DNA of 64,000 bases. It comes from Takakia lepidozioides (taxonomy: Eukaryota; Plantae; Bryophyta). Below, piece by piece: positions 5,294 through 51,397 of this stretch (positions within the stretch are counted from its first letter, which is position 1; every line of letters starts with the position of its first letter). The stretch covers positions 55,428,001 to 55,492,000 of the forward strand of contig CM060731.1 of assembly GCA_030704615.1 (NCBI GenBank), written 5' to 3'. The position numbers and the translations under genes are program-made. The notes beneath the pieces are model-generated. The model did not search any database, was not told the origin of the DNA, and saw nothing but the letters and a program-made list of their open reading frames with translations.

Positions 5294-5295
5294 GA

Positions 5296-15042: not shown

Positions 15043-15449
15043 TTAGATCATTGCATTGTTATGTGCTTTGTGTCTATACGGCATGCTATAAACTCCCTCT
15101 CGAGTAGTGCATGTGACATCTGCATCTAAGTTGTTCCTAGTGTGTCCATTCTTTTGCAAAACAGAGGTAGGGTTCTTATTCTCCTGTGCATCCAGTGAAA
15201 TAGTTCTCATACGCACATTTTGTCTCTTGCATAGGTTTGCAGTTGCATTTCAGGACACCTCGCATACTTCTATTCTACTGTCTCTCAGGATCTCTCCTTT
15301 CAGGTTTGATTCACAGGATCTGAAATTTTTCCAGGGGTGCATAACTGGCCCCCCCTAAAACTTGTTTGCCTGGATCGTGTTTATCTTGCACCCGGTGCAT
15401 CCGCATTGTACTGCTACACTTGTTTTGACGCTTTATGTGAGCCCTAAAC
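15043..15449 (+). mobile_element. Unit A1, 5'-truncated copy ending in a telomeric tract
   Basis: Matches 5340-5749. Confidence 0.75.
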
Positions 15450-15517
15450 CCGAAACCCCTAAACCCTAAACCCTAAAACCCTAAAAAACCGTAAACCCTA
15501 AACCCTAAACCCTAAAC
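15442..15517 (-). repeat. Interstitial telomeric tract, (CCCTAAA)n on +, with variants
   Basis: ccctaaacccgaaacccctaaaccctaaaccctaaaaccctaaa... Confidence 0.95.
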
Positions 15518-15680
15518 TTGTGAGGCTATCCAAAGTCTTTTATCTTGGAATGTTTTGTGCTTTGTGACTATGCACAACGTGCTACACTATTGACGGGCAA
15601 GCGGGCCCTCTTGGTTCTGAAACTTGAGCATTCGCATTATACTCAAGCTCTAAGCTTTGAGGGTGTTCTAAACCCTAAAC

Positions 15681-16658
15681 TTCATGAGGGCTTTTTGAAA
15701 TTTCCTAGTTAGCGTCCTTTGACAGACCTATGGTATGTTGGAAGAGGGCACGGAACTTGCGTTCCTATCTAGTTCGTGCTATGTTACAAATCTAGAGGCT
15801 AGTTGTATTTGAGATATGCAGTTAGCTTCTAGTTTGGATGATTATCCATTTTGGAGAGATCATTAGGATGTTTTATATCTAGATTTTCATGCGTTGGATA
15901 TTTCTCCGCTGCCGAGAAAACTTTGGATGTTTTTCATCTAAGTTTTCATGTGTTGGACGATCTCTCCAGCCAAGACAATTTTGGATGTTTTCCATCCATT
16001 AGGTATTTTCCCTCCCCCCCCGAGACAAGTTCACTTTCCGCAGTATATAAGCGGGGTGAGGGGTACATATTGTATCTCTTTTCCTTCTCTTTCCCACTGA
16101 TGAGCTCAAGCGCTGAGCGAAACTAGTTTGGGGATTATAGAGATTCGCTTTGCTGCATCTTGTGTTCTTGTCTCTTTGTCTCATTGGCGGCGTTGTTGTT
16201 GTTGTTGAGATTTGATCTTCTGCATAGTTCATCGCATTCATTTGTTTTGTGTCTATTGTAGTGCATGTTTTAAACTCTTTTTCGAGTGTTAGATCTCCTT
16301 CTAAGACTGTTCTTTAGTGTGTCTATTCTCTTTCTTAGAGATAGGTTACTATTCTCATGTCCTTACAGTGAATTAGTTTCATCACACACACTTGCCTCTT
16401 GCATATCTTTGCATTTGCACTTTAGAACGTTGCAACATCACTCCCACTCTGTTCTATTCTAGTTTTCTGTGTCTCAGGATCGATTCTTTTAGTTTTGATT
16501 CACAGGCTAGATATTTCTACAAGTTTTCTAAGGTGTCCATAACTGGCCCCCCTAAAAACTTGTTTGCACTTTGCTACTAATGCACTCGGTGCATTCGCGG
16601 CTCGAACTCTGTTGCACTGCTACATGTATATGTTTCCACTCTTTTGTAGACCCTAAAC
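15681..16658 (+). mobile_element. Non-coding unit A2 (diverged relative of A1) with TATA box, hammerhead and telomeric 3' end
   Basis: Colinear similarity to A1 (tagttgtatttgaga, tgtctcaggat, gattcacagg, cataactggcccccctaaaa). TATATAA at 16044-16050. Ends gtagaccctaaa. The 5' boundary is approximate. Confidence 0.7.
16091..16134 (+). ncRNA. Minimal type I hammerhead ribozyme (unit A2)
   Basis: ttccca-CTGATGA-GCTCA agcgc TGAGC-GAAA-C ta GTT-tgggga. Stems I and II pair; stem III is the palindrome ACTAGT. Confidence 0.85.
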
Positions 16659-16758
16659 CCATAAACCCCAAACCCTAAACCCTAAACCGGTGCATCCGCG
16701 TTGTACTGCTACACTTGTTTTCACGCTTTATGTGAACCCTAAACCCTAAACCCTAAAC
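16651..16758 (-). repeat. Two telomeric tracts flanking a ~50-bp 3'-terminal piece of unit A1
   Basis: CCCTAAA tracts at 16651-16688 and 16735-16758 enclose ggtgcatccgcgttgtactgc...tatgtga. Confidence 0.9.
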
Positions 16759-17168
16759 TTGAAGGTGGGGCATATAAGTTTTCCAACTTAGGGGTTGAGA
16801 CTTGACCCTATGTTTGTGAGTGCCTTGAGCGCATGCTTGCCCATAGTGAGCAAGATTTTTGTCGCTAAACAAAGAGAAGCAAACATAAAAAAGCTTACGG
16901 TTGGAGCGAAAGTGCCTCATTCTTCAATTAGAGAACTTTATCTCGTGAGGGCGGGAGTCATTGCATAAGACATAATAGTCTTATAGCATCCCTTTAGGCA
17001 CGATAGGCGCACTTTGTATGCATTTGTCTTGGTTTCCATTGCATTTGTATTTGGGTCCGAACCGGCCCCCCTTAAAATTTACTGTGTCTTTTTCCAGTAT
17101 TTTTTCTACTTTTTGTTACCTTTGCAAGCCTTTCTTGACCACCCTAAACCCTAAAAATCCTAAACCCT
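16759..17168 (+). mobile_element. Unit B 3' part plus telomeric tract
   Basis: Matches 39196-39434 and the reverse of 37283-37665. Ends ttgaccaccctaaaccctaaaaatcctaaaccct. Confidence 0.8.
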
Positions 17169-17378
17169 TCTAGTTTCCTGTCTCTCAGGATCTCTCCTTT
17201 TCAGGTTTGATTCACAAGATCTGAAATTTTTCCGGGGGTGCATAACTGACCCCCCTAAAACTTGTTAGCCCGGATCGTGTTTATCTTGCACCTGGTGCAT
17301 CCGCGTTGTACTGCTACACTTGTTTTGACGCTTTATATGAACCCTAAACTTTCTTACAGTGTTAGCTGCAACACATCA
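17168..17378 (+). mobile_element. Unit A1 3' fragment
   Basis: Matches 5568-5778. Confidence 0.75.
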
Positions 17379-18259: not shown

Positions 18260-19648
18260 TAGAACATATCCATTGAAGAAATGGCGGACATGCCATCTTG
18301 CAATTTGACAGAGACTGTGCACAACGCATGGTTGCAACAGTCTGGGAAACGCGGTCGGGATTTGTATGTGGCAACAACAGATGATCTGATACGTGCCTTG
18401 CAACAACAAACCAGATACCGAGATTTCTTGCGAGGTGGGGTTGGTGGCAAAGGTCCGGACAAACTGGAGTTGATGTTGCGTGCTGCAAATAGATCTGGGG
18501 ATCCAAGCAAGATAGCACGGGCGGTGAGCATGTATGCCCAGGGAACGCCACTTGTTTCAAGAGTTCCACATCTTGAAGGGGAGGAGAGATTCGGCTACTG
18601 TAAGAGGAAATTGAACACCCAACCTGGTTCGGAATCCGATTCGCACAGGGCAGACCGTGATAACTTCTCGAAGCCTCGTGTTCCCCTGTATGACAAATCC
18701 ATTTCCGGAATCTCCATTGTGGAGGAACCTCCGACACGACGGCAGGCTCTAGCATCAAACAATACCACTGAAATGGTGCAGGAGAGAAACTACCCCCTTC
18801 ATGTGCTGAAGTCCGCATGCCCTGACCACGTTTGGCACATAAAACACACAAATGCAGGGTCTCGTGTAAAATGTACAGCAATCAGGGCAACTAATTTCGA
18901 GAAATGTACTTCATCTATATCCAGGGGCGGTGCCCGGACTCCTGCTCCTACTTTCACGGGTTTGATGCGTCCATACGGCCAACCAGAAGCCAAGAACCAC
19001 AAGTTCTGGTTTTGCGCAGACGATTGTGGTAGATGTGTGCATGGAACTGTGCGACCTTCCGTGGTGATGAAGCCAGCTCCTCCAACCATTTGGCCCGTCA
19101 AGATGGGAACACATCTCACAAGTCAGGAGATTGCAATGGTGGAGGAGGTAGGCTTTTCCCTTGCGAGACAACCCCAACTGCATGCATGTGCTTCTACTTC
19201 TGCGTCCTCTCGGGTCCCTCCGACAAATCCTGACTTGTGGCCAACCAAACGAGATGGAAAGCTGGTTTGGCGTTTCCCTCCAACCGCTGAACATTTCGGC
19301 AAAGTGGAGTCCGCAAGAATGCTCCAAGCTCGTGTTGCAAGCACCACGGAAGTACCCGATTCAGGGTATGGTTGGGTGTACACAATGATCACTTCGACAT
19401 TTGCTGTTCATGACAGGGCCTATGACGTCACGGTTTCCAATTTCCCCAATTGCACATGTCCTGATTTTGTGAATATGCTATTAACCAGTTTGGGCAAGAG
19501 AGGAAAAATTCATACCTTGCAAACATTTGTATTACATATTTTTGAAGAGGATGGTTTGCGATCCCAAGCGTGACAATTTCGTTCACCAGGCCACGCTGAG
19601 TTTCAACGAGGTCGATAATCTGTTGCAGCGGGATTCAACACATAGGTA
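18260..19648 (+). mobile_element. MULE family 2 transposase, C-terminal half with SWIM finger
   Basis: DMPSCNLTETVHNAW..DLYVATTDDLIRA..GPD..LMLRAA is paralogous to 3202-3561. SWIM CTCPDF..(frameshift ~19505)..PCKHLYYIF. Confidence 0.78.
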
Positions 19649-21047
19649 GCATCAACTATCACTTCGTGTATCTGGAATGTGATGAATGTGCAATCTGGAA
19701 TGTGCAATCTGAAATGTGCTTTTTATGGACTATGAGTATGCAATCTGGTGTGTGGACAACCATGCTATGAACTGTGCAATTTGCAACATTGTCATGGACA
19801 TTCAATTCAATTCAATTCATTTGCAATATCGTAGCTGGTGCAATGATATGGCATCCCTTATCCCTCCATTATGCTTCGAACTATACTCAGTGAGGTCTCA
19901 GTGGCAACTTTTAAAAGCACATGCATCATTGCTCCTTTTGAAGTCTACATGTTCTCCTGTCGTTATGCACTACAATCATCTTTTATTCAGGTAATGATTC
20001 TTTGCATTAATCCCATGGTCATAGGACCATCCTCGGTTATAGGCGCCGCATGTTCATGTTGACGTGACAGATGGGGATACAGTGCCACGTCAGCATTTGC
20101 CGCCATGTCAACCTGATGACATCACGCTCACGCCACGTCAGCGTGGGTGCACGCTCACGCCACGTCACTCCTGCGTGAGCACGCGCTCACGTGCTCACGC
20201 CATTGCGTCGTTGTCCCCTGGCCAAGGTATGATCATCATCGAGGATCAAATCGCCTTACTGCATCAACTATTACTTGCGACCGCTCATGATGCCGTTTTT
20301 TGGCATCACTTTGAGGTACATACCAGATCAGCATAAACACTTGAGCCTTTAAGAATGAGTTGAAGGTGTTGCAATTCCAAGAGCCCAGCCTGATAATGTA
20401 GACCAGTCATCATGCTATTTCTATGTTCCATGAATGCACAAAAGGTCTGGATCTGGTTTTCCAATCATCTCTCCAAAACTCAATCAGAGTGGAGTGCTAC
20501 AATGAGCATAATCATAACTTTATAGACAACACCAGCTCAAAGGGTATTCCAAAAGGCTAGTTCGATAAGTTAAGCCAGCCCCTATGTATTTTGAAAAAGC
20601 CCAACAAGACCACTGCTTGGTATTCTTCCAAGTCAAGTACAACTTGGTACTTTCCAAGTTAACATAGTAAAACTGAACCTGTTTCAAATTCAAAGGATGG
20701 TTCCAATGGCATCGCTTGGCAACCTTAAACAGGTGTTATGTAATCTGAAAAGCCCATCACGCCAGCTGCTTGGTAATCTCTAAGTTAAAACAGTGTAACC
20801 GGGGCTATTTTAAATTTAGAACTCTGACCTCAATGGTCAAAAAGGACCGTTTGGTACTTACCGTGTTAAATCAGCATGAGAAGGCCTATCTTAAGCATCA
20901 TTGGATAGCCTTATAAGGTCTGGAGATGGTACTCCAGCACTTAGTCAATGGTCCAAATTAATTGTTGGAACCCTTTGACTTTAACATCAACACTAGGGCT
21001 ATCAAAGAGGCAAAATTAATAATGCTAGGGACATTTGCACTACAAAA

Positions 21048-22900
21048 TCATCCTATCATTCTAGATTTAACTAGGAATGAACTCAGCTTTCGCGGATTCC
21101 TCCAACAAATCATCGCTCGAGGAAGAAACCGAAGCTCTGGGACTTGCTGAAGCAACTCGTGGAGTCTAGGGTTTAGGGTGGCCCCCAAGTTCAAGGCTCG
21201 AGTGTACGAAGAGTAGTCGAGCTTAAGAACAAGGGGGGCCCGTTTACCCTCAACTGCGCGTTGCGTCTGTTGGTCGAGTAGAGCGGATCTGAGGTCGTAG
21301 GAGATCTTGGTGAAGCAACTCCGGATGATCGCCGCCGGATAACCTCGGGCTCGAAGACGTTTGTAAAACAAAAGTCGCAAATGGTTGAACCCTTGGATGG
21401 TGCTTTCTCGTATTACGTACCGTTGGAGCTCGCCGATGATGAAAGCTTTCTTTTGGTGATGTGGATGCCACGAGGACCAAGGCAAGTATTGATACTTGCT
21501 ATGGGCCTTTTGATGACATCTAGTAGAGAGCCGTCGAGTTTGGATGAAGTCGTCTCCTTTGAGGAAGGTGATATCCAAGATGTCGGCGGACGTCGGGCTT
21601 ATGGCGGTCGTGATTTTGATGCCATCGAACATGGAACCGTAGTTCCGTAACCAGGACCGGAGTCTCTTTTCGGAGCCTACCCAGATGCCAAAGCCGTCGT
21701 CGATATAGCGCTTAAGATAAAGCAGCTCTTGCTCCGATGGGCACACGTACTCCATGTACATCTCCAACCGACAGAGGAACAAACAAGCGTAAACAATTGC
21801 AAAGTTGTTCCCCATGGCCGTCCCGCGAATTTGGTGCCAAAAACTACCATTGAACTCAAGGTAATGGTGTTTCAAGACTAATCTAGCGAGGGTCATGATC
21901 AGGTCTTTTTTGTGTTTGGTGAAATTACCTCCAATAGCACATTCGAGCTCATACAAGCCGAGCTCGGTGATGATGCTGGGATATAGAGATTCCACGTCAA
22001 ACGTAAAAAGAAGAGCATGCGAGGGGACCTCGAGTTGGGAAACCTCTCGAAGAAGCGTGAGAGAATCAACCAAATGAGTGGGTTCCTTGAGAAGTACCGG
22101 AAGGAGTTGGTGATGGAGCCAAATTGAAGCATGCTCGAAGATGTAGTTGTTGTAGGAACAAATGGGTCTTCCAACAAGCACGGGTTTGTGCACCTTCGGA
22201 ATGAAGTACAAAGCACAAGCTCGAAAGTCCATGGACGACCGAGGGCGTTGGCAGATGTAATTCCATTATTTGGTGGAGATCGCAAACCTGTAGATTGGAT
22301 GGCAAGCTAGCACCTCCAACCTCGACCAAAGTTCTTCCCACGGTACGGAATCCACGGGACGATAAACTTCGGTGTCTGAGAGTTGCCGCATCGCCTCTTG
22401 CATGTACCAAGACTTGTCCATAAGCACAAGACCAAGATTTTTGTCGGCCGGCTTGATGACAAGGTCCGGATCCGACCTCAATCTTTTGAGAGCAAGTCTC
22501 AAGTGTCTCGGCAGACAAGGTCGTGCATTGCGGGCGATTCGATCCAAACGGCTAGACAAAAGATCATTACCTTCTCGAATGATGGCCTCGAGCGGTTGAG
22601 ATTCCACTGGCGGATTGAATGATGGATTCGGAACGCGCCAAAGAGGAACCTCGTCGTTGTCTTTGCCGGAGAAGAACGTTTGCAACCTCAAGCTTCGAGC
22701 AAAATTGTTGAATTCGGTGATGATTGAAGATCGGGAAGGGGGAAGAGGACGAGGAATGTAATTGAGACCAAGGCCCAGGAGTTGTCGCTCCGCAAAGGAG
22801 AGAACCCTCTTGCTATAGTTGTGGATAGCAGTGTTGGTGACCCTGCATTCCACTTGGGAGGGAGTCTTCCTAGTAAAGAGCAACAAAGCGTAAGCCTTCG
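21048..22900 (-). CDS. Penelope-like element reverse transcriptase, no GIY-YIG endonuclease; one in-frame stop at 22266-22268
   Basis: LGLGLNYIP, IKPADKNLGLVLMD, YFIPKVHK, GRPICS, TFDVESLYPSI, QIRGTAMG, RYIDD, thumb HQK..YQYLPWSSWHP..K..GEL.RY, RARGYP. ORFs 22266-22886 and 21048-22232 share a frame. Ends LVKSRMIG* without an endonuclease. Confidence 0.92.
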
Positions 22901-22903
22901 GGT

Positions 22904-23735
22904 CTACAAGCGGGTACTAGAAGAGACTCCTCGTGCACCCCCGCGTTTGTGAGGAGGTACGTATGGCCGCTTCGTCGTCGTCGTCGTCGTCGCACCCTTC
23001 GTCGTGGCCGGTTTTCCGTTGACCCTCGCTGAAGGTTTTCGGCCTCCCGTACCAGAACCGGTTGTGCGGTTCGGGCCTGACCTCTTGTTGAAAGAGGTAG
23101 GTGACGCAGCAGAACGGGTGGAGACCCGGATACCTTTCTGCTGCTTGCCGTTTCCCGACTTTCCGCCAGGATTCGCCTTAGGCTTACTAGCCGGTTTGGT
23201 CCCAAGCTTCTGGGCCTTAGGTTTCACCTGGATGGAATTCACCACCTTCTTCACCTCCTTGAGTGCTTCCTTGATCACCTCGCGTTTCACGAGGGTAGCA
23301 ATGGACGGTTCCACAGGGAGGGTCTCCGCTTCTTCCATAGCACCTTCCCGAGCAACGTTGCGAGCGGCGATAGCTGCGGCCTTGCTGACGTCGGAAAGTT
23401 GTTTGTGAATGAGAAATGCATCTACTTGAGTAACAAAGAGATTGCTAAGATGAAGATGCCACGACTCGATGGAAGACTTAGACTTGTCACCTATCAAATT
23501 TCGGCCACTGGCATTGCACAGTGTAAGCTCGGGTGGCCCTCTAGATACCCGCACAACACTGGCGACGGGGTTTGTACTCCTCAGAAGACGGCCCTTCACA
23601 GCAGTACTTGGTGGTTCAACATTTGTTTGCGCCTTCACAAATCGTGCCTCTGGTTGCCCCAACACGGTGATAATCTCGACAAAGCTGCTATGCTCCAGCA
23701 ACACACCAACATGCCATGGGAGCAGAGGCTCAATG
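22904..23735 (-). CDS. Probable ORF1 of the Penelope-like element (helical segment, then basic K/R/G/T-rich tail)
   Basis: Co-oriented ORF ending ~17 nt before the first in-frame TTG of the RT. Contains SIATLVKREVIKEALKEVKK followed by a basic tail. The true start is uncertain; the annotated N-terminus runs through a G/C-run tract. Confidence 0.6.
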
Positions 23736-23812
23736 GAGTGGAGGGGGAGCGGGCGGGGGCCCGGGCTGGGTGCGGGGCGGAGGGGGTGGGGGTGGGGCCG
23801 GGGGGTGGGGAT
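23735..23812 (+). other. G-run tract, potential G-quadruplex
   Basis: About ten runs of 3 or more G in ~75 bp. Confidence 0.6.
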
Positions 23813-25466
23813 TTGACAGGCGGGCTCCGGCAGCGCAGGGCTCAGGCAAGGAGGGCCCACGGTCTCGCGCATTTAACTCCATGTCTAGTGTAAACCAAAT
23901 TTATACATGCACAATGTTGAATGGCATACGTTGTGAGTTAATGTCAAACTGAACGAAAAGCGAGGGATGGACTGAAACTTCTGGACGGAAACTCGTGAAC
24001 GGAAACGTCAACAGATGAATGAGATTTGGATGAAGTTTCGATGTAAGATTCTGGCCGTTCGATCGGATTAGGGTAAGAACGGACGGTCATGACATGCTGT
24101 TTTAATTTAGGTTTTGGGGGGCGCATTACAATCCCCCAGTGCTCTTCATTTTTCATTGTTTCCTCGCTCTATCTCTCTCGCTCTCTCTCTCTCGCTCTAC
24201 TGTGTCTCGTAATCTTTGAGCCTGTGTACCTCTGTTGCTTGCATTCTAATTGCTTACACAATTCTGAGCCTGTTTGGAGGAGATGGAATGTTGTCAAAAG
24301 CTCGGCTAGCCTGTACTGATATACCGCTCTTGCTGTGGCTTGATATTAGCTTCTTTCAGGAACTGAGCCTGGTTTGTCCATCCATTACTTCGATTGATAG
24401 CATTGATCTGCACAACGAATTACTTCACCTCAATGTATTTTGTGAGCCCGCTCAATCGCGACTGTAGCAGAGAGGGAGAGGAGACTTTCGACATTTGAAG
24501 GAGTTTTGCGGACTCCGGTACCAGAGAAAAATCTTCCTCTCTTCCGTTTTCTATGAGATAGATAATCCGCATAGTCTTGACTACCTTATTCAGAGAACAA
24601 TGAAGCTAGAGTAGGTTAATTTATCTTTTCACAGACCGTTGCTTCTCATTAGCTAGCTAATTTCATTTGCAGTGAACGAGCAGTATTATCTGCATTGGCT
24701 GTGAAGGATTTTTTGCACCATATCAAGATAACTCCATCCTTGCATGCGCACCCATATAAGAGTGGCGAAGTTTTGGAACGATGGAGACATTGAGAGGACA
24801 TTGCAACTCTGTTAATCTGATGTGAATGAGAGAATATTAATGTGCAGCACCTGGTGCAGGAACACTAGTGCAGAGCGTTTCGATTGAGACAGGAGCGGAT
24901 TGGCGGATGAATTGAGCGACAGGAGTTGCAATAAGGCTAAACCTCTACTTACACGTAAGTGCTTCGACCTTGTTGATGTGTTTGAAACTAATTTATTTGG
25001 TTCTTGAAAGGAGGAAGGTCTCCTAGTGGAAGGTCTCCTAGTTGTTTTCGTTGAGTTTTTGGATCTTGATACTGCCTTCGTTCAGTTAGAGTTAGTACCA
25101 ACTGTGCCTTGGGAGCTCATGGTCCCTCTGGCCCTGGGGTAGTTATGGTAGAGTACTTCTTGTGTGGCAGATGACTTGGGGAAAAAGCTGTTAACATTGC
25201 GGGCTGTCTATTCAGGTCTTCTCCCATCGTGTATCTTAATAAAATACTATCAAGGTTGGTCAGCCTGCAAGATACAGCTCCAGATATGGCGGATACACCG
25301 GGGGCTGCTATTTCACGAGCGGCATGAGCATGAGCGGAAAAAAACACTCTAGGTCCTCACGCGAATTTCTCCCCTCCTGAGCGCTCGATCTGTGCCCGTC
25401 TTTCTTTCTTTACACCTTGCGTTCGCGGAGTTCCTTCCCGCCGCAGTGCTAGTCTGATAGCAACTC

Positions 25467-25680
25467 ATGGGCACAAGGCGGGATCTCATTTTCATTCAAG
25501 AAGGCGGCTCTGAGATTGCCAAGCTCCGCTCTCCTAAGACAGCTGCGGATGTTTTGAATGCTCTACGGCGTAATGGGGATCTGTTTGATCAAGAGGGAGT
25601 TCTGCTGCTTGGGAGTGATTCCTTGGACCCAGGAGACTATACCTTTAAGCAGGTTGATGCTCCTTCAACAACAGACACAA
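25467..25680 (+). CDS. Probable N-terminal header exon of a Crinkler/CR-type protein (ubiquitin-like, tentative)
   Basis: MGTRRDLIFIQEGG..DVLNALRR.GDLFDQEGVLLLGSDSLDPGDYTFKQ. Follows a CT-rich 5' UTR-like stretch and ends at phase-1 GT donor candidates. Partial repeats at 31153-31260, 48360-48468 and 62866-62970. Confidence 0.5.
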
Positions 25681-29022: not shown

Positions 29023-29053
<31 letters not shown>

Positions 29054-36055: not shown

Positions 36056-36403
36056 TTTAAGGGTTTAGGGTTCAGGGTTCACAGAAAGTGTCAAAACAAA
36101 ATGTTGTGCGAGTACAACGTGGATGCACCGGGTGCAAAATAAACACAATCCGGGCAAACAAAGTTTTAGGAGGCCTGTTATGCACCCTGGAAAAATTTCA
36201 GATCCTGTGAATCAAACCTAAAAAGAGAGATCCCGAGAGACAGGAGGAAACTAGAATAGAAGTATGTGAGGTGTCCTGAAATGCTGAAATGAATTGCAAA
36301 CCTATGCAGAGGCAAAAGTGCGTATGAGAACTATTTCACTGTATGCACAGGAGAATATAACCCTATCTCTGTTTTGCAAGAGAATGGACACACTAGGAAC
36401 AAC
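36056..36403 (-). mobile_element. Telomeric tract plus diverged, 5'-truncated unit A1
   Basis: gggtttagggttcagggttcacagaaagtgtcaaaac..., the reverse complement of the A1 3' part. Confidence 0.75.
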
Positions 36404-37257
36404 ACTTTCACTGTAGTGCTGGATGAAGCGTAGGTGTTGGGAAGGAAAAAATGTAAAATGACTATGAATCCCTACGAGACGAAAGAGCTAAGGTCCATTT
36501 TTCTCCGTTGATCAAAGCCCTAGTGGGGCCATCTATGGCATTGGCCAGAAAAAAAGCATTTGGAAAGTATTGTTGCTAGTACAGGTTTTGTAGCTTTGAA
36601 GCTGGAAGAGGGACATGGACATAGGTTCGCTGATTGCAAAAGAAGGGGGGTGGTGGCCGGTTCAATTTCTTCTGCTCCATTTTCTTCATGGACAGATGTG
36701 CGTCGTTCAGGTTCTGAAATTCTGCAGCGAGTACCTGAAGCTAGAGGATGATCATATGGAGGACAATGCACAGTATCTGCTGGAAAAGTTCAGAGGCCGT
36801 CGAAGGTGTTTGGTAAGTTGTGTCGAGCGCCTTCTGAGGAAGGCTAGAGGAAGATGGGATATAACGGTAGTAGACAACTATTTCAAGGAGATCACAAGCA
36901 ACACCAATGACAGCACTTCCATTTATTATGCTGTGAGCGCTCTGTGTGGAGCAAAAGGAACATTTGTCCTGAAAGAAGAATCGTTCAATGGTGCTTCCTT
37001 GGTGCAAAGAATAGGAACCTCCTTTGCCTATGCAGGGAGGGGAGAAACATACCGTTTCAAACGGACGGAGATATGACTTTGCTCGAGTGTGTGGCCTTGG
37101 ACAGCTACACCATTCAACAGGTTCCCAATTCACTTTCTCTATAGTCGAACCGACAGTCCATCATAGCATCATGAACTATTTGACGATCAACCATTCATTT
37201 GAGAAATCACTTAAAGACTACATGGTTGATTGCAAGGATGATCCCAGTGCAATGGGT
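36404..37257 (+). pseudogene. Fragment of a probable CR-type P-loop NTPase gene
   Basis: FTVVLDEA*VL (Walker B-like) at ~36405-36440, then YLLEKFRGRRRCLVSCVERLL and LLECVAL. Stops and frameshifts present. Ends at a telomeric tract. Confidence 0.4.
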
Positions 37258-37963
37258 AGGGTTTAGGGTTTAGGGTTAGGGTGGTCAACAAAGGCTTGCA
37301 AAGATAACAAAAAGTAGAAAAAATACTGGAAAAAGACACAGTAAATTTTATGGGGGGCCGGTTAGGACCCAAATACAAACGCAATGGAAACCAAGACAAA
37401 TGCATACAAAGTGCGCCTATCGTGCCTAAAGGGATGCTATATAAGACTATTATGTCTTATGCAAGGACTCCCGCCCTCACGAGATATAAGGTCTCTAATT
37501 GAAGAATGAGGCACTTTCGCTCCAAACGTAAGCTTTTTTATGTTTGCTTCTCCTTGTTTAGCGACAAAAATCTTGCTCACTATGGGCAAGCATGCGCTCA
37601 AGGCACTCACAAACATAGGGTCAAGTCTCAACCCCTAGTTGGAAAACTTATATGCCCCACCTTCAAAAAGAGGTTCGTACCTCTAAGGAAGAATGGGAGG
37701 GATTACCGCATAAGGTCATCGACGAGAAGGTTAGGTCGGCAGAGGCTTGCGCATGCCCATAGTCCTCTGATCGCTCGAGATGAACTCGAGGGAGGATCAA
37801 CCAAGTCCCTTCTCTCCGACCATGGGGCGTACGACAGGGGGAACCGTGTAGTCGGGGCTAAATTAGCTTGCCCGACACGATTACCATATACCCCCAGCCA
37901 CCTTCCCCATTGTAAAGCGGTGGCTAAGATGGCGTCAAACGGAAGGCTCTATACGCCCGTGCT
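37256..37963 (-). mobile_element. Telomeric tract (37256-37282) plus 5'-truncated unit B
   Basis: gtagggtttagggtttagggttagggtggtcaac..., the reverse complement of unit B. Confidence 0.8.
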
Positions 37964-39207
37964 TCTCGTCACGAAGTCCCAACCAAGCAATCCACCCATT
38001 CTACACATCAACAGAGATCCAAACCCACTTATGTGTCTATCTCCTTCTATCGAATTTGTAAACTACATTTGCTGCAAGAGAGCAACAGCCATGAGCATAA
38101 ATGACCTGTTAGAAGCACGCATGTGACCATCTCTGTCATCTGCTAGTCAGTACAGTGTTCGTAAGAGAAATGAAGTGAAATGAAATGAAATGGTGTTTTA
38201 TAACGTCCGCGGAAAGCTCAGAAGAAAGAGAGAAAGAAGCATGAGATTGCAATGACCTATCTGAGGGGAAGAGGTCACCGCTGCGTTTTTTCACCATGCA
38301 GAAAAATTTGACAAGAGTCTCTACGAACTCTGCTATAGGCAACTCCTCAATTTCCTTCTCCCTTCTCCCTGTCATCGGGGTTTTGTCATCGGGATAATTT
38401 AGGTTTTCTTGTGGCGGTCTGAGTTTCTTAGGGCTCTGCGGCCTGAGTTTGCTGATAGTGAGGTTTAAGTACTTAGGGTTTGTTGTCACCAGATCGTTTC
38501 AAGGTTATTGAAAGCTTTGCAAACTTTGTGAAGGCAGGCAGAAGCTCCACTTGCCTTCACTCCATAAATTTTTGCAAGGCTTTCGTAGCAAGGGTTGTAG
38601 GGTATGTCTTCTTGTACTTGGGAATTATCCCATATCGTTTGCACATAGTGAGGGTGTTTTTCTAGTATATAAGGATAGGCTTGGCTCTTAGGACTTCATC
38701 TCTTGGTGTTCCACTGATGAGCTTGAGCAATCAAGCGAAACTTGTTTGGAATAAAACACCTTAACTCTTTTTGTGTCTCCACACTTAGAGAAGTCGAGAG
38801 TCTAGTCCTTGCCCGCCCGGGCAATTTGGATCGAAGGGGTGCTCGGCTCCAAGGGGAATCCCAACCCTTGGATACTTCCGAGGTCTTTTTTCTTTCCGAA
38901 GCACGGGCGTATAGAGCCTTCCGTTTGACGCCATCTTAGCCACCGCTTACAATGGGGAAGGCGGCTGGGGGTATATGGTAATCGTGTCGGGCAAGCTAAT
39001 TTAGCCCCGTCTACACGATTCCCCCTGTCGTACGCCCGATGGTCGGAGAGAAGGGACTTGGTTGATCCTCCCTCGAGTTCATCTCGAGCGATCAGAGGAC
39101 TATGGGCATGCGCAAGCCTCTGCCGGCCTAACCTTCTCGTCGATGACCTTATGCGATAATCCCTCCCATTCTTCCTTAGAGGTATGAACCTCCTTTTGAA
39201 GGTGGGG
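37964..39207 (+). repeat. Inner inverted repeat arm (partner 43717-44955)
   Basis: Matching ORF translations on opposite strands (38136-38489 vs 44435-44776; 38480 vs 44259). Confidence 0.88.
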
Positions 39208-39434
39208 CATATAAGTTTTCCAACTAGGGGTTGAGACTTGACCCTATGTTTGTGAGTGCCTTGAGCGCATGCTTGCCCATAGTGAGCAAGATTTTTGTCG
39301 CTAAACAAGGAGAAGCAAAAATAAAAAAGCTTAGGGTTGGAACGAAAGTGCCTCATTCTTCAATTAGAGAACTTTATCTCGTGAGGGCGGGAGTCCTTGC
39401 ATAAGACATAATAGTCTTATTGCATCCCTTTAGG
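38619..39434 (+). mobile_element. Unit B (TATA at 38666-38672, hammerhead), broken at 3' and capped by TTTAGGG
   Basis: Matches 40512-41296 and 43717-44305 in reverse. catccctttagg|gtttaggg here versus catccctttagg|cacg in the uninterrupted copies. Confidence 0.8.
38705..38760 (+). ncRNA. Minimal type I hammerhead ribozyme (unit B)
   Basis: ggtg-ttcca-CTGATGA-GCTTGA gcaa TCAAGC-GAAA-C tt GTT-tggaa..cacc. 6-bp stem II closed by a GNRA loop. Confidence 0.87.
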
Positions 39435-40514
39435 GTTTAGGGTTTAGGGTTCAGGGTTCACATAAAGCGTCAAAACAAGTGTAGCAGTACAACGCGGATG
39501 CACCGGGTGCAAGATAAACACGATCCGGGCCAACAAGTTTTAGGGGGGGCCAGTTATGCACCCCTGGAAAAATTTCAGATCTTGTGAATCAAACCTGAAA
39601 GGAGAGATCCTGAGAGACATGAAACTAGAATAGAAGTATGCGAGGTGTCCTGAAATGCAACTGCAAACCTATGCAAGAGGCAAATGTGCGTATGAGAACT
39701 TTTTCACTGGATGCACAAGATAATAAGAACCCTATCTCTGTTTTGCAAGAGAATGGACACACTAGGAACAACTTAGATGCAGATCTCACATGCACTACTC
39801 GAGAGGGAGTTTACGGCATGCCGTATAGACACAGAGCACATAACAATGCAATGATCTAAAGCAGGGGATACAAACGCATCTAAAACTCGACAACTTCAAA
39901 GGGTGAGACCACGAGGCAAGATCATGCAAAGTAGTGAAGCCAAATCTTTATAGACCCCAGACTAGTTTCGCTCAGCGCGTGAGAAAGTCATCCAGTGAAT
40001 GAAAACAAGTTCTCGACAAGAGAGAACTAGATCCAAAGAATAAAAATCATCCAAATAGTCAATTGCATATCTCTCAAATACAACTAACTCCGTGAGTTTA
40101 TGACTATGTAACAACCAATTATGCTGAAGTTAGAGCATGTTGTGCAAAGTCGTAAGGGCTGAAACCACTTCGAAAGGAACGCACAACTCGTAAGAGCTTT
40201 GCACACGCAGACCATCGCGCAACCATCGTCTTGCTAAAGCCTGCAGCTGTGTTGTCCTGAACGTGTCCAACCACGATTCCCACCTTCCGACCTCCAAGAC
40301 GAAACACGGCTCGGTCTTCGTATTGTTGCCTCATCACATGAATGAGCAGCTTGGTCAAAAGAATGAAGATCAACATCTGCCTCCATTACGTGAAGGCGAT
40401 TAAAGATGTATTGCAGCTAACACTGTAAGAAAGTTTAGGGTTCACATAAAGCGTCAAAACAAGTGTAGCAGTACAACGCGGATGCACTGGGTGCAAGATA
40501 AATACGATCCGGGC
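39429..40514 (-). mobile_element. Telomeric tract plus more than one monomer of unit A1 (tandem junction), with TATA and the 5' half of the hammerhead deleted
   Basis: The A1 3' end occurs twice (39455 and 40433). Hammerhead 3' half ..TGAGC GAAAC ta GTC tgggg at 39983-39955. Confidence 0.75.
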
Positions 40515-41296
40515 AAGGACTCCCGCCCTCACGAGATAAGGTTCTCTAATTGAAGAATGAGGCACTTTCGCTCCAACCGTAAGCTTTTTTATGTTTGCTT
40601 CTCCTTGTTTAGCGACAAAAATCTTGCTCACTATGGGCAAGCATGCGCTCAAGGCACTCACAAACATAGGGTCAAGTCTCAACCCCTAGTTGGAAAACTT
40701 ATATGCCCCACCTTCAAAAAGAGGTTCGTACCTCTAAGGAAGAATGGGAGGGATTACCGCATAAGGTCATCGACGAGAAGGTTAGGTCGGCAGAGGCTTG
40801 CGCATGCCCATAGTCCTCTGATCGCTCGAGATGAACTCGAGGGCGGATCAACCAAGTCCCTTCTCTCCGACCATCGGGCGTACGACAGGAGGCATCGTGT
40901 AGTCGGGGCTAAATTAGCTTGCCCGACACGATTACCATATACCCCCAGCCGCCTTCCCCATTGTAAGCGGTGGCTAAGATGGCGTCAAACGGAAGGCTCT
41001 ATACGCCCGTGCTTCGGAAAGAAAAAAAGCCTCGGAAGTATCCAAGGGTTGGGATTCCCCTTGGAGCCGAGCAGCCCTTTGATCCAAGTTTGCCCAGGCG
41101 GGCAAGGACTAGACTCTCGACTTCTCTAAGTGTGGAGACACAAAAAGAGTTAAGGTGTTTTATTCCAAACAAGTTTCGCTTGATTGCTCAAGCTCATCAG
41201 TGGAACACCAAGAGATGAAGTCCTAAGAGCCAAGCCTATCCTTATATACTAGAAAAGCACCCTCACTATGTGCAAACGATATGGGATAATTCCCAA
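40512..41296 (-). mobile_element. Unit B directly downstream of RT copy 2 (pLTR-like position)
   Basis: Same strand as the RT, starting ~165 nt after its stop codon. TATATAA at 41248-41242. Confidence 0.75.
41154..41209 (-). ncRNA. Hammerhead ribozyme (unit B)
   Basis: Exact reverse complement of 38705-38760. Confidence 0.87.
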
Positions 41297-41459
41297 GGCA
41301 ATAATAATGCCACTAAAGCACTAATTTAGCCTCCAAGTCAAAACTGCATTAATTAGTCAATGGTCCAAATTAATTGTTGGAACCCTTTGACTTTAACATC
41401 AACACTAGGGCTATCAAAGAGGCAAAATTAATAATGCTAGGGACATTTGCACTACAAAA

Positions 41460-42587
41460 TCATCCTATCATTCTAGATTTAACTAGGAATGAACTCAGCT
41501 TTCGTGGATTCCTCCAACAAATCATCACTCGAGGAAGAAACCGAAGCTCCGGGACTTGCTGAAGCAACTCGTGGAGTCTAGGGTTTAGGGTGGCCCCCAA
41601 GTTCAAGGCTCGAGTGTACGAAGAGTATTCGAGCTTAAGAACAAGGGGGGCCCGTTTACCCTCAACTGCGCGTTGCGTCTGTTGGTCGAGTAGAGCGGAT
41701 CTGAGGTCGTCGGAGATCGTGATGAAGCAACTCCGGATGAACGCCGCCGGATAACCTCGGGCTCGAAGACGTTTGTAAAACAAAAGTCGCAAATGGTTGA
41801 ACCCTTGGATGGTGCTTTCTCGTATTACGTACCGTTGGAGCTCGCCGACGACGAAAGCTTTCTTTTGGTGATGTGGATGCCACGAGGACCAAGGCAAGTA
41901 TTGATACTTGTTCTGGGCTTTTTGATGACATCTAGTAGAGAGCCGTCGAGTTTGGATGAAGTCGTCTCCTTTGAAGAAGGTGATATCCAAGATGTCGGCG
42001 GACGTCGGGCTTATGGCGGTCGTGATTTTGATGCCATCGAACATAGAACCGTAGTTCCGTAACCAGGACCGGAGGCTCTTTTCGGAGCCTACCCAGATGC
42101 CAAAGCCGTCGTCGATATAGCGCTTAAGATAAAGCAGCTCTTGCTCCGATGGGCACACGTACTCCATGTACATCTCCAACCGACAGAGGAACAAACAAGC
42201 GTAAACAACTGCAAAGTTGCTCCCCATGGCCGTCCCGCGAATTTGGTGCCAAAAACTACCATTGAACTCAAGGTAATGGTGTTTCAAGACTAATCCAGCG
42301 AGGGTCATGATCAGGTCTTTTTTGTGTTTGGTGAAATTACCTCCAATAGCACATTCGAGCTCATACAAGCCGAGCTCGGTGATGATGCTGGGATATAGAG
42401 ATTCCACGTCAAACGTAAAAAGAAGAGCATGCGAGGGGACCTCGAGTTGGGAAACCTCTCGAAGAAGCGTGAGAGAATCAACCAAATCAGTGGGTTCCTT
42501 GAGAAGTACTGGAAGGAGTTGGTGATGGAGCCAAATTGAAGCATGCTCGAAGATGTAGTTGTTGTAGAAACAAATGGGTCTTCCAAG
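41460..42587 (-). pseudogene. Penelope-like RT, copy 2; 5'-truncated and capped by telomeric repeats
   Basis: Highly similar to 21048-22175. Stops at tcttccaa|gtttagggtttaggg. Confidence 0.9.
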
Positions 42588-42632
42588 TTTAGGGTTTAGG
42601 GTTTAGGGTTCAGGGTTGAGGGTTCAGGGTTT
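42587..42632 (+). repeat. Telomeric tract with TTCAGGG/TTGAGGG variants
   Basis: gtttagggtttagggtttagggttcagggttgagggttcagggttt. Confidence 0.95.
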
Positions 42633-43716
42633 TTGCCCCACCAGATTTTCTTCCTGAATCACCTCATCCGCTACAGGTGCTGCAGTGTCTTGATATTCTA
42701 CCCCTGGTACTTCCGTCACAGGTGTGGGTATTACATGCACAATAGGGTTTCCCCTGGACAACCGTTGCACCTCTGGAATCACCGTTTCCCTTACCAAGCC
42801 AGAGTTTTCATAGAGAAGGTCACCCTTCTCAATTTCGGCCACGACCTGCTCTGTAGTGGGAATGTCCAACCTTTCTCCTTCCTGAGCAATTGGTGGTGAT
42901 GCCACAACATATACTAGTTGTGGAACCTCCAAAACAACAGAGTCAATTGGTTGTGGTCAACAAAGGCTTGCAAAGGTAACAAAAAGTAGAAAAAATACTA
43001 GAAAAAGACACAGTAAATTTTAAGGGGGTCGGGACACATGAGGGGTTGCCCCTGTGGTGGGGGCAGCGGCAGCGATAGGTACGGGGGGCTGAAGCACCCT
43101 TAGTGCCCAAGGCACTCAAGGAGGCGGAGGCGCTCACTAGGTGGAGCCCCGCACACCGGGTTGCGGTGGGGGTGGCTCCACAAGGGGTGGTGGTAGCTTA
43201 GCGGGACTTAGTGGGGGTGGCATAGGACTCACCATGGGGGCGGAGACCTCGTGGTGGGAGTCGTGGGGAGTCTTGGGACTCATCACGGTCCATAGGGGCC
43301 GTGGTGAGTGGGCCAAGACTCACCGCGACTCATCACCGGGAGTCGAGGGTTTTCGTGGTGGTTCGCCATAAAATGGCATGGCTGGTTGTGAAACCCCCGC
43401 GGACAGCTACAGAAGTATATATAGGGAGTAGTAACCCCGAGAACAGTGCAAGCCCGTTGGTGACCAAAAACTAGTGAGTAAGCGAGCGAGCCGGAAATCG
43501 ACCAAAGAGTAGGGAGCTGTTCCGGACTGCCAACTACCAAAGGGAATTCCCGCTGGTTCCAAATCGGTGGAGGGTTCTTTGGGAGAACAAAGGGGGACCG
43601 TTATGCCCCGTTGAGCAGCCGAAGCTCCAAGTTGGCCCGGCGGCCAGATTGGGAGTCAGGCGCGCGTATCAAAGCGAATAACTATGACTTGAGGGGAGCT
43701 TACCGAAGTGAGGGAC

Positions 43717-44305
43717 ACCCCACCTTCAAAAAGAGGTTCGTACCTCTAAGGAAGAATGGGAGGGATTACTGCATAAGGTCATCGACGAGAAGGTTAAGTC
43801 GGCAGAGGCTTGCGCATGCCCATAGTCCTCTGATCGCTCGAGATGAACTCGAGGGAGGATCAACCAAGTCCCTTCTCTCCGACCATGGGGCGTACGACAG
43901 GGGGAACCGTGTAGTCGGGGCTAAATTAGCTTGCCCGACACGATTACCATATACCCCCAGCCGCCTTCCCCATTGTAAGCGGTGGCTAAGATGGCGTCAA
44001 ACGGAAGGCTCTATACGCCCGTGCTTCGGAAAGAAAAAGACCTCGGAAGTATCCAAGGGTTGGGATTCCCCTTGGAGCCGAGCACCCCTTCGATCCAAAT
44101 TGCCCGGGCGGGCAAGGACTAGACTCTCGACTTCTCTAAGTGTGGAGACACAAAAAGAGTTAAGGTGTTTTATTCCAAACAAGTTTCGCTTGATTGCTCA
44201 AGCTCATCAGTGGAACACCAAGAGATGAAGTCCTAAGAGCCAAGCCTATCCTTATATACTAGAAAAGCACCCTCACTATGTGCAAACGATATGGGATAAT
44301 TCCCA
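43717..44305 (-). mobile_element. Unit B 5' part
   Basis: Reverse complement of 38619-39207. Confidence 0.8.
44164..44219 (-). ncRNA. Hammerhead ribozyme (unit B)
   Basis: Exact reverse complement of 38705-38760. Confidence 0.87.

Positions 44306-51361: not shown

Positions 51362-51397
<36 letters not shown>

What the first reader, a model, noticed from the sequence alone, without database searches (positions are those of the whole stretch)
15043..44305. Telomere-primed retroelement system: endonuclease-less Penelope RT plus several hammerhead-bearing non-coding RNA partners
Seen: an RT with all Penelope motifs but no GIY-YIG domain. Three non-coding families (A1, A2, B) share one layout: TATATAA, a hammerhead ~40-50 nt downstream, 0.5-0.9 kb of body, a conserved hairpin, then ACCCTAA(A). 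Copies are 5'-truncated and their 3' ends abut telomeric tracts in the polarity expected if a G-rich chromosome 3' end primed cDNA synthesis. Unit B sits right behind RT copy 2. Established: EN-deficient PLEs (Athena, Coprina, bdelloid Terminons) attach to telomeres, and PLE pLTRs carry minimal hammerheads. Inference: A1 and A2 are non-autonomous, retrozyme-like RNAs mobilised in trans to chromosome ends or breaks. That would be a multi-component plant analogue of Terminons or HeT-A/TART.
Basis: partly seen in the sequence, partly recalled or inferred. Interest (0 to 1): 0.92.

Follow-up and report, generated by a model that had tools for sequence, protein, structure and literature searches.

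The report
Telomere-attached Penelope-like retroelement stack
This plant-type genome region holds stacked, cut-short copies of endonuclease-free Penelope-like retroelements that were copied onto telomere repeats. Two of the three supposed "non-coding partner RNAs" are these elements' own ribozyme-bearing tail ends (the third, A1, is unresolved), a kind of element already known from spike moss, fungi and rotifers.

Summary
There is an endonuclease-free Penelope-like RT with an upstream ORF1. There are five intact minimal type-I hammerheads, each 47-53 nt after a TATATAAG box. There are many 5'-truncated copies whose 3' ends run into (CCCTAAA)n in the polarity expected for priming by a telomeric G-strand end.

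- B is physically the 3' region of the RT element. A same-organism DNA contig spans RT, TATA, hammerhead and B body.
- A2 carries a broken RT C-terminal remnant just upstream of its TATA box.
- The order RT, TATA(A/T)-type box (weak in Cryptomeria, degenerate in L007), hammerhead, 0.1-1.9 kb body, CCCTAAA recurs in Selaginella (there on a neighbouring copy in the chain), Cryptomeria, Closterium and an unnamed relative.

So at least A2 and B are pseudo-LTR-like tail modules of endonuclease-free (Coprina-type) PLE lineages, seen as 5'-truncated additions. They are not stand-alone RNA genes. A1 shows no RT remnant and could still be a non-autonomous derivative.

The "conserved hairpin" has no folding or covariation support.

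Details worth keeping:
- One junction falls on the hammerhead cleavage site.
- A 37-nt tail is present only on A1 ends joined to non-telomeric DNA.
- A telomere-complement 12-mer sits inside RT codons in four lineages.

Verdict: new member of a known kind. The scan noted the same system on other pieces of this genome.

The parts
15043..15441 (+). A1-lineage 3' fragment, 5'-truncated, joined on its left to a repeat shared with 1-1032
   Evidence: 94-95% identical to 5340-5749 and 39859-39429. Ends in ...TATGTGAG followed by CCCTAAA.
15442..15517 (+). C-strand telomeric tract with variant units
15518..16659 (+). A2-lineage PLE 3' portion. Broken RT C-terminal remnant at 15524-15780. TATATAAG box at 16044-16051 (53 nt before the core). 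Hammerhead at 16091-16134, cleaving between 16128 and 16129. 531-nt body.
   Evidence: tblastn E 4e-13 to RT residues 297-390. blastx gives 47 homologue hits. Hammerhead anatomy.
16660..16688 (+). C-strand telomeric tract after the A2 3' end
16689..16758 (+). A1 terminal 48 bp (16689-16736) plus a telomeric tract (16737-16758)
16759..17167 (+). B-lineage 3' fragment (16759-17141) plus a telomeric tract (17142-17167)
   Evidence: 96-98% identical to 37666-37258 and 40717-40513
17168..17377 (+). A1 3' fragment, one CCCTAAAC unit (17342-17349) and a 28-nt tail (17350-17377) joined to non-telomeric DNA
20941..23872 (-). RT copy 1. ORF1 at 22904-23872. RT at 21048-22886 with one in-frame stop at 22266-22268. 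The copy is 3'-truncated 107 nt after its stop codon and has no hammerhead module.
   Evidence: ORFs. Homologues. ORF1 is similar to the ORF1 of L005 and L002, E about 1e-11. Homology to copy 2 ends at 20941.
36056..36403 (-). Telomeric tract (36056-36077) plus an A1-like 3' fragment (36078-36403, 85-87% identical to A1)
37258..37965 (-). Telomeric tract (37258-37283) plus the 3' 680 bp of B with its natural end
   Evidence: A contig of run X6 joins 40513 to 37460, which shows the canonical B.
38617..39434 (+). B copy starting 8-11 nt upstream of its USE-like box. USE-like box at 38628-38637, TATA box about 38666, hammerhead core at 38714-38740. It is 3'-truncated and healed by TTTAGGG repeats.
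39429..40388 (-). Telomeric tract (39429-39456) plus the longest A1 copy (39457-40388). This copy has an internal deletion of about 170 bp that removes the TATA box and the 5' half of the hammerhead. No RT remnant lies upstream.
40389..42586 (-). RT copy 2 (41460-42586, 5'-truncated), then a USE-like box (41277-41286), a TATA box (about 41241-41248), a hammerhead (cleaving between 41168 and 41167) and the B body to 40513. This is followed by an A1-type terminal 79 bp (40434-40512), one CCCTAAAC unit and a 37-nt tail.
   Evidence: A DNA contig of run X1 spans 41016-41934.
42588..42640 (-). Telomeric tract capping the 5'-truncated RT copy 2, with CCCTGAA and CCCTCAA variant units
42953..44307 (-). 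Variant B copy. Head with USE-like box (44287-44296) and hammerhead core (44184-44210). A different 680-bp middle. B terminal 81 bp (42953-43033) with no telomeric repeats.
4876..5786 (.). Outside the given span. A1 head on the minus strand (5263 to 4876) ends at the hammerhead cleavage site and is joined to unrelated DNA. Then (TTTAGGG)4 at 5264-5292. Then the A1 body on the plus strand (5295-5749) with a 37-nt tail.

Best explanation
WHAT IT IS
The region is a fossil stack of endonuclease-deficient Penelope-like retroelements of the Coprina type, from at least three diverged lineages (RT/B, A2, A1).

ELEMENT ORDER
A full element reads: ORF1, RT, about 200-300 nt, TATATAAG box, about 50 nt, minimal type-I hammerhead, 0.5-0.9 kb tail region, and one or a few CCCUAAA units at the RNA 3' end. 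In the B lineage a plant snRNA-type USE-like box precedes the TATA box.

HOW IT WORKS (steps 1-3 and 5 inferred from junctions and from the published model for Athena and Coprina; step 4 rests on element order alone)
1. A G-rich telomeric 3' end, or a healed break, anneals to the CCCUAAA units and primes cDNA synthesis by the element's RT.
2. Synthesis usually stops early, which gives 5'-truncated copies.
3. Telomerase re-caps the end, and the next element is added.
4. The TATA-hammerhead module works like a PLE pseudo-LTR. In head-to-tail arrays it can start transcription of the next unit downstream. The ribozyme trims the RNA.
5. RNA ends made by the ribozyme, or the RNA's true 3' end 37 nt past CCCUAAAC, can also be copied onto non-telomeric breaks.

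WHAT THE UNITS ARE
B and A2 are tail modules of RT-bearing elements, seen alone because of 5' truncation. A1 is unresolved. The stack is now interstitial, in two opposite orientations, with unrelated repeats and a host kinase exon between the parts.
For: RT FAMILY
- The RT C-part has homologues in Cryptomeria, Ginkgo, Selaginella and Closterium at 38-70% identity.
- A profile search also reaches Microbotryum and Coccomyxa.
- None of these carries an endonuclease family.
- The DKN motif and the invariant RT residues are present.
- The Selaginella homologue lies between CCCTAAA tracts behind an ORF1.

B IS THE RT ELEMENT'S TAIL
- B follows RT copy 2 in the window.
- A same-organism DNA contig of depth 1225 covers RT end, TATA box, hammerhead and B body.
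- RT and B depths are similar.

A2 COMES FROM AN RT-BEARING ELEMENT
- It has an RT remnant, E 4e-13.

CONSERVED ORDER IN RELATIVES
- L002 is a tandem array with period 4330.
- L003 has the hammerhead 635 nt after the RT stop, then a CCCTAAA tract.
- L004 and L005 are 3937-nt rotated contigs in which CCCTAAACC sits 8 nt before the ORF1 ATG.
- L007 shows the same order, though its TATA box is degenerate.
- In L001 the body of the hammerhead unit is 97.8% identical to the RT copy's 3' region; the region between that RT's stop and the shared body holds no hammerhead.
- Sources.

HAMMERHEAD AND PROMOTER
- Hammerhead covariation is strong.
- The helix III 6-mers are palindromic in four different versions.
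- The TATA box lies 40-58 nt upstream of the core in all seven lineages; the Cryptomeria box (TATTTATT) is a weak match.

JUNCTIONS
- Polarity of tracts against element 3' ends.
- Junction at the cleavage site within 2 nt.
- A chimera of B body with an A1 3' end.
- The A1 tail is present on 3 of 3 ends joined to non-telomeric DNA and on 0 of 4 ends joined to tracts.

LITERATURE
- PMC8557442, PMC4209133, PMC6431247, PMC13159263 and PMC11167929.
Against: - No formal phylogeny with reference Coprina, Athena, Naiad or TERT sequences could be built.
- In the Selaginella locus the RT-linked copy has no hammerhead between its stop codon and the shared 3' body, and the hammerhead-bearing copy has no RT similarity directly upstream. 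RT-hammerhead contiguity is therefore not shown in that lineage.
- A1 shows no RT remnant in about 450 nt upstream of its hammerhead, where A2 has one.
- A1-type 3' ends are the commonest in the window, 7 of about 12. This would fit an efficient non-autonomous template.
- The A2 RT remnant is broken and is not close to any retrieved RT (at most 47% identity). A2 could therefore be a cut-down derivative rather than a recent truncation.
- One tract (5264-5292) is followed by a sense A1 body. The simple chain model does not predict this.
- No transcript ends could be seen. The runs were held as contigs only, and the two possible RNA runs cover only 38260-38619 and 39981-40306.
Confidence: 0.75

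Rival explanations
1. The TATA-hammerhead-body-CCCTAAA units (A1 at least, perhaps A2) are dedicated non-autonomous RNAs. They are transcribed from their own promoter, trimmed by the ribozyme, and copied in trans by the PLE RT onto chromosome ends. That would make a split system of an enzyme-coding element plus passenger or template RNAs.
For: - A1 has no RT trace upstream and supplies most 3' ends in the window.
- An A1 3' end is fused to a B/RT copy. Both RNAs were therefore used in one reverse-transcription event.
- A TATA-type box aimed at the hammerhead recurs from Closterium to this genome, and weakly in the conifer.
- The B lineage has an exact TCCCATATCG box 28 nt upstream of its TATA box.
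- Animal PLE-derived non-autonomous hammerhead elements are known (preprint 10.64898/2026.07.22.740005).
- Unchecked notes of this scan on other pieces of the genome say the same.
Against: - B and A2 are physically tied to RT coding sequence.
- No copy in the window begins at the predicted start site or at the cleavage site. The 5' ends are scattered.
- Copies with the promoter also contain sequence upstream of it, which a transcript from that promoter could not supply.
- RT and B depths are similar in the DNA run.
Confidence: 0.3
2. The units are LTRs of an LTR retrotransposon, or plant LTR-type retrozymes mobilised by Gypsy elements.
For: Direct repeats that carry a promoter and a hammerhead look superficially like retrozyme LTRs (PMC5680766).
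Against: - The hammerheads are type I with a minimal palindromic helix III.
- The units end in telomeric repeats and lie behind a PLE RT.
- No LTR-element proteins lie next to them.
- From my own knowledge: plant retrozymes carry type III hammerheads.
Confidence: 0.02
3. The telomeric tracts are interstitial relics of chromosome fusion, or assembly errors, and lie next to the elements by chance.
For: - The arrays are interstitial and face opposite ways.
- One tract does not fit the chain model.
Against: - Ten junctions start exactly at element 3' termini with the same polarity.
- Variant units sit next to the element end.
- The same architecture occurs in Selaginella and Closterium loci.
- DNA contigs from other runs reproduce the junctions.
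Confidence: 0.03

Closest known systems
Coprina-clade endonuclease-deficient PLEs, including Sm1 and Sm2 of Selaginella moellendorffii (Gladyshev and Arkhipova 2007, as cited in PMC8557442, PMC4209133 and PMC13159263)
   Same: - RT family: 49% identity to a Selaginella protein that lies between CCCTAAA tracts, and a profile hit to Microbotryum.
- DKN motif, no endonuclease, ORF1 plus RT.
- Hammerhead in the pseudo-LTR region.
- The 3' end is complementary to the telomeric G strand.
- 5'-truncated copies are capped by telomeric repeats.
   Different: - Another host genome.
- Three co-resident lineages with different tail regions, plus a chimeric copy.
- The arrays are interstitial here.
- Clade placement rests on nearest named relatives, not on a tree with reference sequences.
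Athena elements and Terminons of bdelloid rotifers (PMC6431247, PMC12477314)
   Same: - Endonuclease-free PLE RT.
- Head-to-tail chains of 5'-truncated units separated by short telomeric tracts.
- Unrelated or host sequence between units.
- Priming by G-rich overhangs on reverse-complement repeats at the RNA 3' end.
   Different: - There the hammerhead sits immediately before the terminal repeats. Here it lies 0.5-0.9 kb upstream, just after a TATA box.
- No giant units or accessory enzymes are seen here.
Animal non-LTR retrozymes and other pseudo-LTR-derived non-autonomous PLE sequences (PMC7229834, preprint 10.64898/2026.07.22.740005)
   Same: - Minimal type-I hammerhead with a short palindromic helix III that suggests action as a dimer.
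- Derivation from the PLE pseudo-LTR.
   Different: - Those form tandem arrays and circular RNAs and are not attached to telomeres.
- Non-autonomy is not shown here, except possibly for A1.
HeT-A, TART and TAHRE of Drosophila (PMC5537684)
   Same: Works alike (from my own knowledge):
- Head-to-tail terminal arrays.
- A promoter in the 3' region that can drive the next unit.
   Different: - Non-LTR (LINE) clade, no ribozyme, and no telomerase in the host (from my own knowledge).
- Here telomerase repeats alternate with the elements.
Plant telomerase RNA genes with a type-3 USE plus TATA promoter (PMC8287931, PMC6765143)
   Same: - The B lineage has TCCCATATCG upstream of its TATA box.
- The RNA carries CCCUAAA template-like units.
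   Different: - The USE-TATA gap is 28 bp. Arabidopsis uses 23-24 bp for Pol III and 32-34 bp for Pol II.
- The USE-like box is significant only in B and Closterium.
- The body has T-runs.
- There is no evidence of a telomerase RNA fold.

Membership tests
Penelope-like element (RT) | PLE-type RT core with N-terminal motifs and a DKN/DKG motif | tested here: met
   The sequence shows IPKVHK..GRPI, FDVESLYPSI, QIRGTAMG, RYIDD and ADKN. All invariant columns of a 14-protein family alignment are present. Homologues carry the families DUF8422 and HTH_animal plus weak RVT_1.
Penelope-like element (structure) | Hammerhead ribozyme in a pseudo-LTR region, and an optional 30-40 bp tail | tested here: met
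   Hammerhead with covariation. A 37-nt tail lies beyond CCCTAAAC on three A1 ends. This matches the tail described in PMC11167929 and PMC8557442.
EN-deficient PLE (Coprina/Athena grade) | No GIY-YIG endonuclease at either end of the RT protein | tested here: met
   The ORF ends at the homologues' C-terminus. More than 100 homologue clusters carry no endonuclease family. The sequence downstream is the TATA-hammerhead module. Pfam finds nothing in ORF1 or the N-terminal piece.
EN-deficient PLE (Coprina/Athena grade) | 3' ends joined to telomeric repeats in C-strand polarity, with 5'-truncated copies capped by repeats | tested here: met
Coprina clade | RT groups with reference Coprina sequences in a phylogeny | tested here: inconclusive
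   The nearest named relatives are Selaginella and Microbotryum. The literature places both hosts' elements in Coprina (PMC8557442, PMC13159263). No reference sequences were available for a tree.
Athena/Terminon | Hammerhead immediately upstream of the terminal reverse-complement telomeric repeats | tested here: not met
   The hammerhead lies 504-832 nt upstream of the 3' end.
Chlamys-derived PLE-X (EN-minus, Selaginella) | CxC motif, and insertion at a fixed 28S rDNA site | tested here: not met
   There is no CxC motif in the N-terminal piece. The flanks are telomeric tracts, not 28S. The LSU-like fragments at 28925, 51300 and 60710 lie in other repeats.
Hammerhead ribozyme, type I | Conserved core, three helices, open helix I | tested here: met
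   The core is invariant in 6 lineages. 12 of 14 pairs are compensatory, and no shuffle out of 500 reaches the observed values. Rfam models do not score it, probably because helix III is only 2 bp.
Hammerhead ribozyme, type I | Self-cleavage | not testable with these tools
   Indirect only. One genomic junction falls on the predicted cleavage site within 2 nt.
Non-autonomous retrozyme-like partner | No coding descent in the unit, a discrete 5' end, and amplification beyond the autonomous element | tested here: inconclusive
   Not met for B or A2. A1 has no RT trace, but its 5' ends are scattered and no genome-wide counts were possible.
Plant LTR-type retrozyme | Type III hammerhead inside true LTRs (type III requirement is from my own knowledge) | tested here: not met
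   The topology is type I, and the units end in telomeric repeats.
Plant snRNA / telomerase-RNA type-3 promoter | USE (TCCCACATCG) at a fixed distance from the TATA box | tested here: inconclusive
   B: 1 mismatch, 28-bp gap, p about 9e-4. Closterium: 2 mismatches, 32-bp gap, p about 0.012. A1, A2, Selaginella, Cryptomeria and L004 are not significant. Consensus and spacing are taken from PMC11961915 and PMC8287931.

The most novel reading that the evidence does not exclude
The tail module is a transcription unit in its own right. A conserved TATA promoter (with a USE-like box in some lineages) fires straight into the hammerhead. The ribozyme removes the capped leader. The resulting uncapped RNA, which ends in CCCUAAA, serves as a dedicated template for the PLE RT at chromosome ends and breaks. 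A1 would be a pure template lineage. This would be a split 'RT gene plus template RNA' system, halfway between a retrotransposon and telomerase with its RNA.
Probability: 0.22. Interest if true: 0.8.

Novelty: new member of a known kind. Interest (0 to 1): 0.42.

Why it matters
- A 2025 review calls telomere-attached PLEs rare in plants and cites only Selaginella (PMC12477314). This window and its relatives show the same element family in another plant-type genome, and RT homologues in a conifer, Ginkgo, a zygnematophyte alga and Coccomyxa.
- The layout is shared: a promoter aimed at a minimal hammerhead, inside the 3' region.
- The window also keeps molecular fossils that bear on an open question, namely what the PLE hammerhead does:
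  - a junction at the cleavage site;
  - a tail copied only at non-telomeric ends;
  - a chimera between two lineages' RNAs.
- These observations turn into direct tests with RNA end mapping and RT assays.
- It does not establish a new kind of telomere system.

Tried and rejected
- Rfam at gathering and E-value thresholds gave no hammerhead hit.
- The other five CUGAUGA...GAAA matches (26247, 30670, 48925, 54135, 62381) have no helices and are chance.
- The local Pfam copy gave nothing for the RT, ORF1 or neighbouring ORFs, and only weak RVT_1 for homologues. The families DUF8422 and HTH_animal appear only in precomputed annotations.
- phmmer against PDB gave no match, so no TERT comparison was possible.
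- The 3' hairpin has no support from folding or alignment.
- Expression could not be judged. Only contigs were available, and the two possible RNA runs touch only a 260-bp repeat of another family and the A1 upstream region.
- A USE-like box as a general feature is rejected. It is significant only in B and Closterium.
- An RT remnant upstream of A1 was not found.
- A close A-lineage RT among the 143 retrieved proteins was not found.
- The papers of Gladyshev and Arkhipova 2007 and Arkhipova et al. 2017 are not held. Their content is cited second-hand.
- The RT was searched as separate pieces around its in-frame stop.

Full report
**What is in the sequence**

Two-unit TTTAGGG matches occur 27 times against 0.03 expected. 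A search for the hammerhead core found ten matches. Five have real helices: 16097 (+) and 4906 (-) of one type, and 38714 (+), 41200 (-) and 44210 (-) of a second type. Each sits 47-53 nt downstream of TATATAAG. The other five matches have no pairing and are chance.

Rfam scores none of them at any threshold. An alignment with hammerheads from five related loci nevertheless shows an invariant core. In that alignment 86.7% of cells are paired against 65.8% in shuffles (0 of 500 shuffles reach it). Compensatory changes occur in 12 of 14 pairs, and slid controls give 26-48%.

Helix III is a 2-bp stem with a 2-nt loop. Its 6-mer is a palindrome in four different versions: ACUAGU, ACCGGU, ACAUGU and AUCGAU. 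This is the minimal, probably dimer-acting, PLE hammerhead of Cervera and de la Pena (PMC4209133).

**The RT**

On the minus strand, ORF1 (22904-23872) is followed by an RT frame (21048-22886) with one in-frame stop. Copy 2 (41460-42586) is 5'-truncated against a telomeric tract.

- The RT C-part finds proteins of 555-640 aa in Cryptomeria, Ginkgo, Selaginella and Closterium.
- A family profile also reaches Microbotryum and Coccomyxa.
- None carries an endonuclease family. The window ORF ends where they end.
- The DKN motif and all invariant RT residues are present. There is no CxC motif.
- ORF1 is related to the ORF1 of two relatives.
- The Selaginella homologue lies behind an ORF1 and between CCCTAAA tracts.

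The literature places Selaginella and Microbotryum elements in the EN-deficient Coprina clade (PMC8557442, PMC13159263). I could not build a tree with reference sequences.

**What A1, A2 and B are**

*B.* B follows RT copy 2 directly. The RT stop is at 41460, a USE-like box at 41277-41286, the TATA box near 41245, and the hammerhead cleaves between 41168 and 41167. A 920-nt DNA contig from a run of the same organism label covers 41016-41934 at depth 1225. RT and B depths are similar. RT copy 1 simply lacks this part; its homology to copy 2 stops 107 nt after the stop codon.

*A2.* The stretch between the telomeric tract at 15517 and the TATA box is not a separate fragment. Positions 15524-15780 encode RT residues 297-390 at 44-47% identity (E 4e-13), and 47 homologues hit it. 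It is broken by a stop and a frameshift. Its apparent telomeric ending is a motif inside RT codons.

*Relatives.* The same order, RT then a TATA-type box (weak in Cryptomeria, degenerate in L007), then a hammerhead 40-58 nt later (distances measured in seven lineages), then 0.1-1.9 kb, then CCCTAAA, is found in:
- Cryptomeria, as a tandem array with period 4330;
- Closterium;
- an unnamed relative whose two 3937-nt contigs are rotations of each other, with CCCTAAACC 8 nt before the ORF1 ATG;
- L007.

In Selaginella the body of a hammerhead unit is 97.8% identical to the RT copy's 3' region, but the stretch between that RT's stop and the shared body holds no hammerhead, and the hammerhead-bearing copy has no RT similarity directly upstream.

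So the unit is the element's pseudo-LTR-like tail. In arrays its promoter faces the next ORF1.

*A1.* A1 is different. Its longest copy (39457-40388) carries about 450 nt upstream of the hammerhead with no RT similarity (best E 0.2). A1-type ends are the most frequent in the window.

**Junctions**

Seven of ten multi-unit tracts, and three single units, begin exactly at an A1, A2 or B 3' terminus on the C-rich strand. The downstream neighbour is a 5'-truncated copy. This is the published Athena and Coprina pattern (PMC6431247, PMC8557442).

- Variant units (CCCTGAA) sit next to the element end. This suggests the RNA itself ends in one to three repeats.
- At 39434 a B copy is cut short and followed by TTTAGGG repeats and an inverted A1. 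This reads as a break healed by telomerase and then extended.
- At 40513 a B body continues into an A1-type terminal 79 bp. This is most simply a template switch between two RNAs.
- Three A1 ends carry 28-37 nt beyond CCCTAAAC, and all three abut unrelated DNA. The four A1 ends at tracts lack it (p about 0.03 by my count). This resembles the PLE tail and the two RT start sites shown for an EN-positive PLE (PMC11167929).
- At 4876 an A1 head ends on the predicted cleavage site, with 2 nt of ambiguity, and continues into a sequence found intact at 1034. The polarity fits copying of the upstream cleavage product onto a broken DNA end.

**What failed**

- The "conserved hairpin" is conserved sequence without structural support.
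- No transcript ends could be read.
- The USE-like box is exact in all three B copies. It is significant in only one other lineage, and its 28-bp spacing matches neither polymerase class (PMC8287931).

**Setting**

The parts lie at 15043-17377, 20941-23872 and 36056-44307. They face opposite ways. They are separated by an ORF with a SWIM-like CxC..H motif, large repeats, and a protein-kinase exon. The stack is therefore interstitial now.

**Verdict**

These are endonuclease-free Coprina-type PLEs with ribozyme-bearing tail modules, stacked by telomere-primed reverse transcription. This is a known kind in a further host. The multi-component reading survives only as a possibility for A1. Other readers and follow-up agents of this scan noted the same system on other pieces of this genome. 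I used their notes as leads and tested what I could in this window.

Noticed in passing
window 21165-21178 and 41577-41590; L001 7616-7629; L002 and L006 RT C-termini: A telomere-complement 12-mer, CCCTAAACCCTA, lies inside RT codons (T-L-N-P) about 130 nt before the stop. It is exact in the window RT, Selaginella, Cryptomeria and L006. It is near-exact in L004 and in the A2 remnant. It is lost at synonymous sites in L007. This suggests selection on the nucleotides. An internal annealing or template site is a guess.
   Followed up: partly
window 3752-5786 with 1-2159 and 14018-15043: A sequence that is continuous at 1-2159 is split elsewhere at the same point. One half (14018-15043) is joined to a sense A1 body. 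The other half (4875-3752, inverted) is joined to an A1 head at the hammerhead cleavage site. (TTTAGGG)4 followed by a sense A1 body at 5264-5749 does not fit the simple chain model.
   Followed up: partly
window 15347-15362, 16547-16562, 17063-17078; L004 about 2850: A C-run followed by TAAAA (GGCCCCCC(C)TAAAA) lies 95-115 nt before the 3' end in A1, A2 and B. A relative has a similar motif. Its role is unknown.
   Followed up: no
window 24287-32299, 47763-64000: Three copies of a repeat of about 6 kb, 98% identical, with strong AT skew, internal 583-bp repeats and no ORF over 110 aa. It carries fragments resembling large-subunit rRNA at 28925-29052, 51300-51419 and 60710-60829 (46.6 and 43.3 bits, just below Rfam's threshold of 50). 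A 260-bp piece of it abuts two B copies with a 3-nt microhomology.
   Followed up: partly
window 32787-33404: A protein-kinase domain fragment (Pfam Pkinase, E 1.9e-10) lies between the element arrays, so host coding sequence is interleaved.
   Followed up: no
window 18281-19573: A 430-aa ORF with no Pfam hit ends in a CTCPDF...H pattern that recalls the SWIM zinc finger of MULE/FAR1 transposases. This resemblance is from memory and was not tested.
   Followed up: no
L004 and L005: Two runs each gave a 3937-nt contig of the same element, and the two are rotated relative to each other. This is the signature of a tandem array or a circular molecule of one ORF1-RT-hammerhead-tail unit.
   Followed up: no
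window 42913-43100: DNA-run word depth jumps to about 46,000 against 1,000-2,000 for the PLE parts. A very high-copy repeat overlaps the variant B copy.
   Followed up: no
window 39981-40306: Contigs from two runs guessed to be RNA cover the A1 upstream region and continue into the TATA region as in the 5-kb copy. On the other side they continue into a sequence like 34213-34240. This is possible read-through or host-linked transcription.
   Followed up: no
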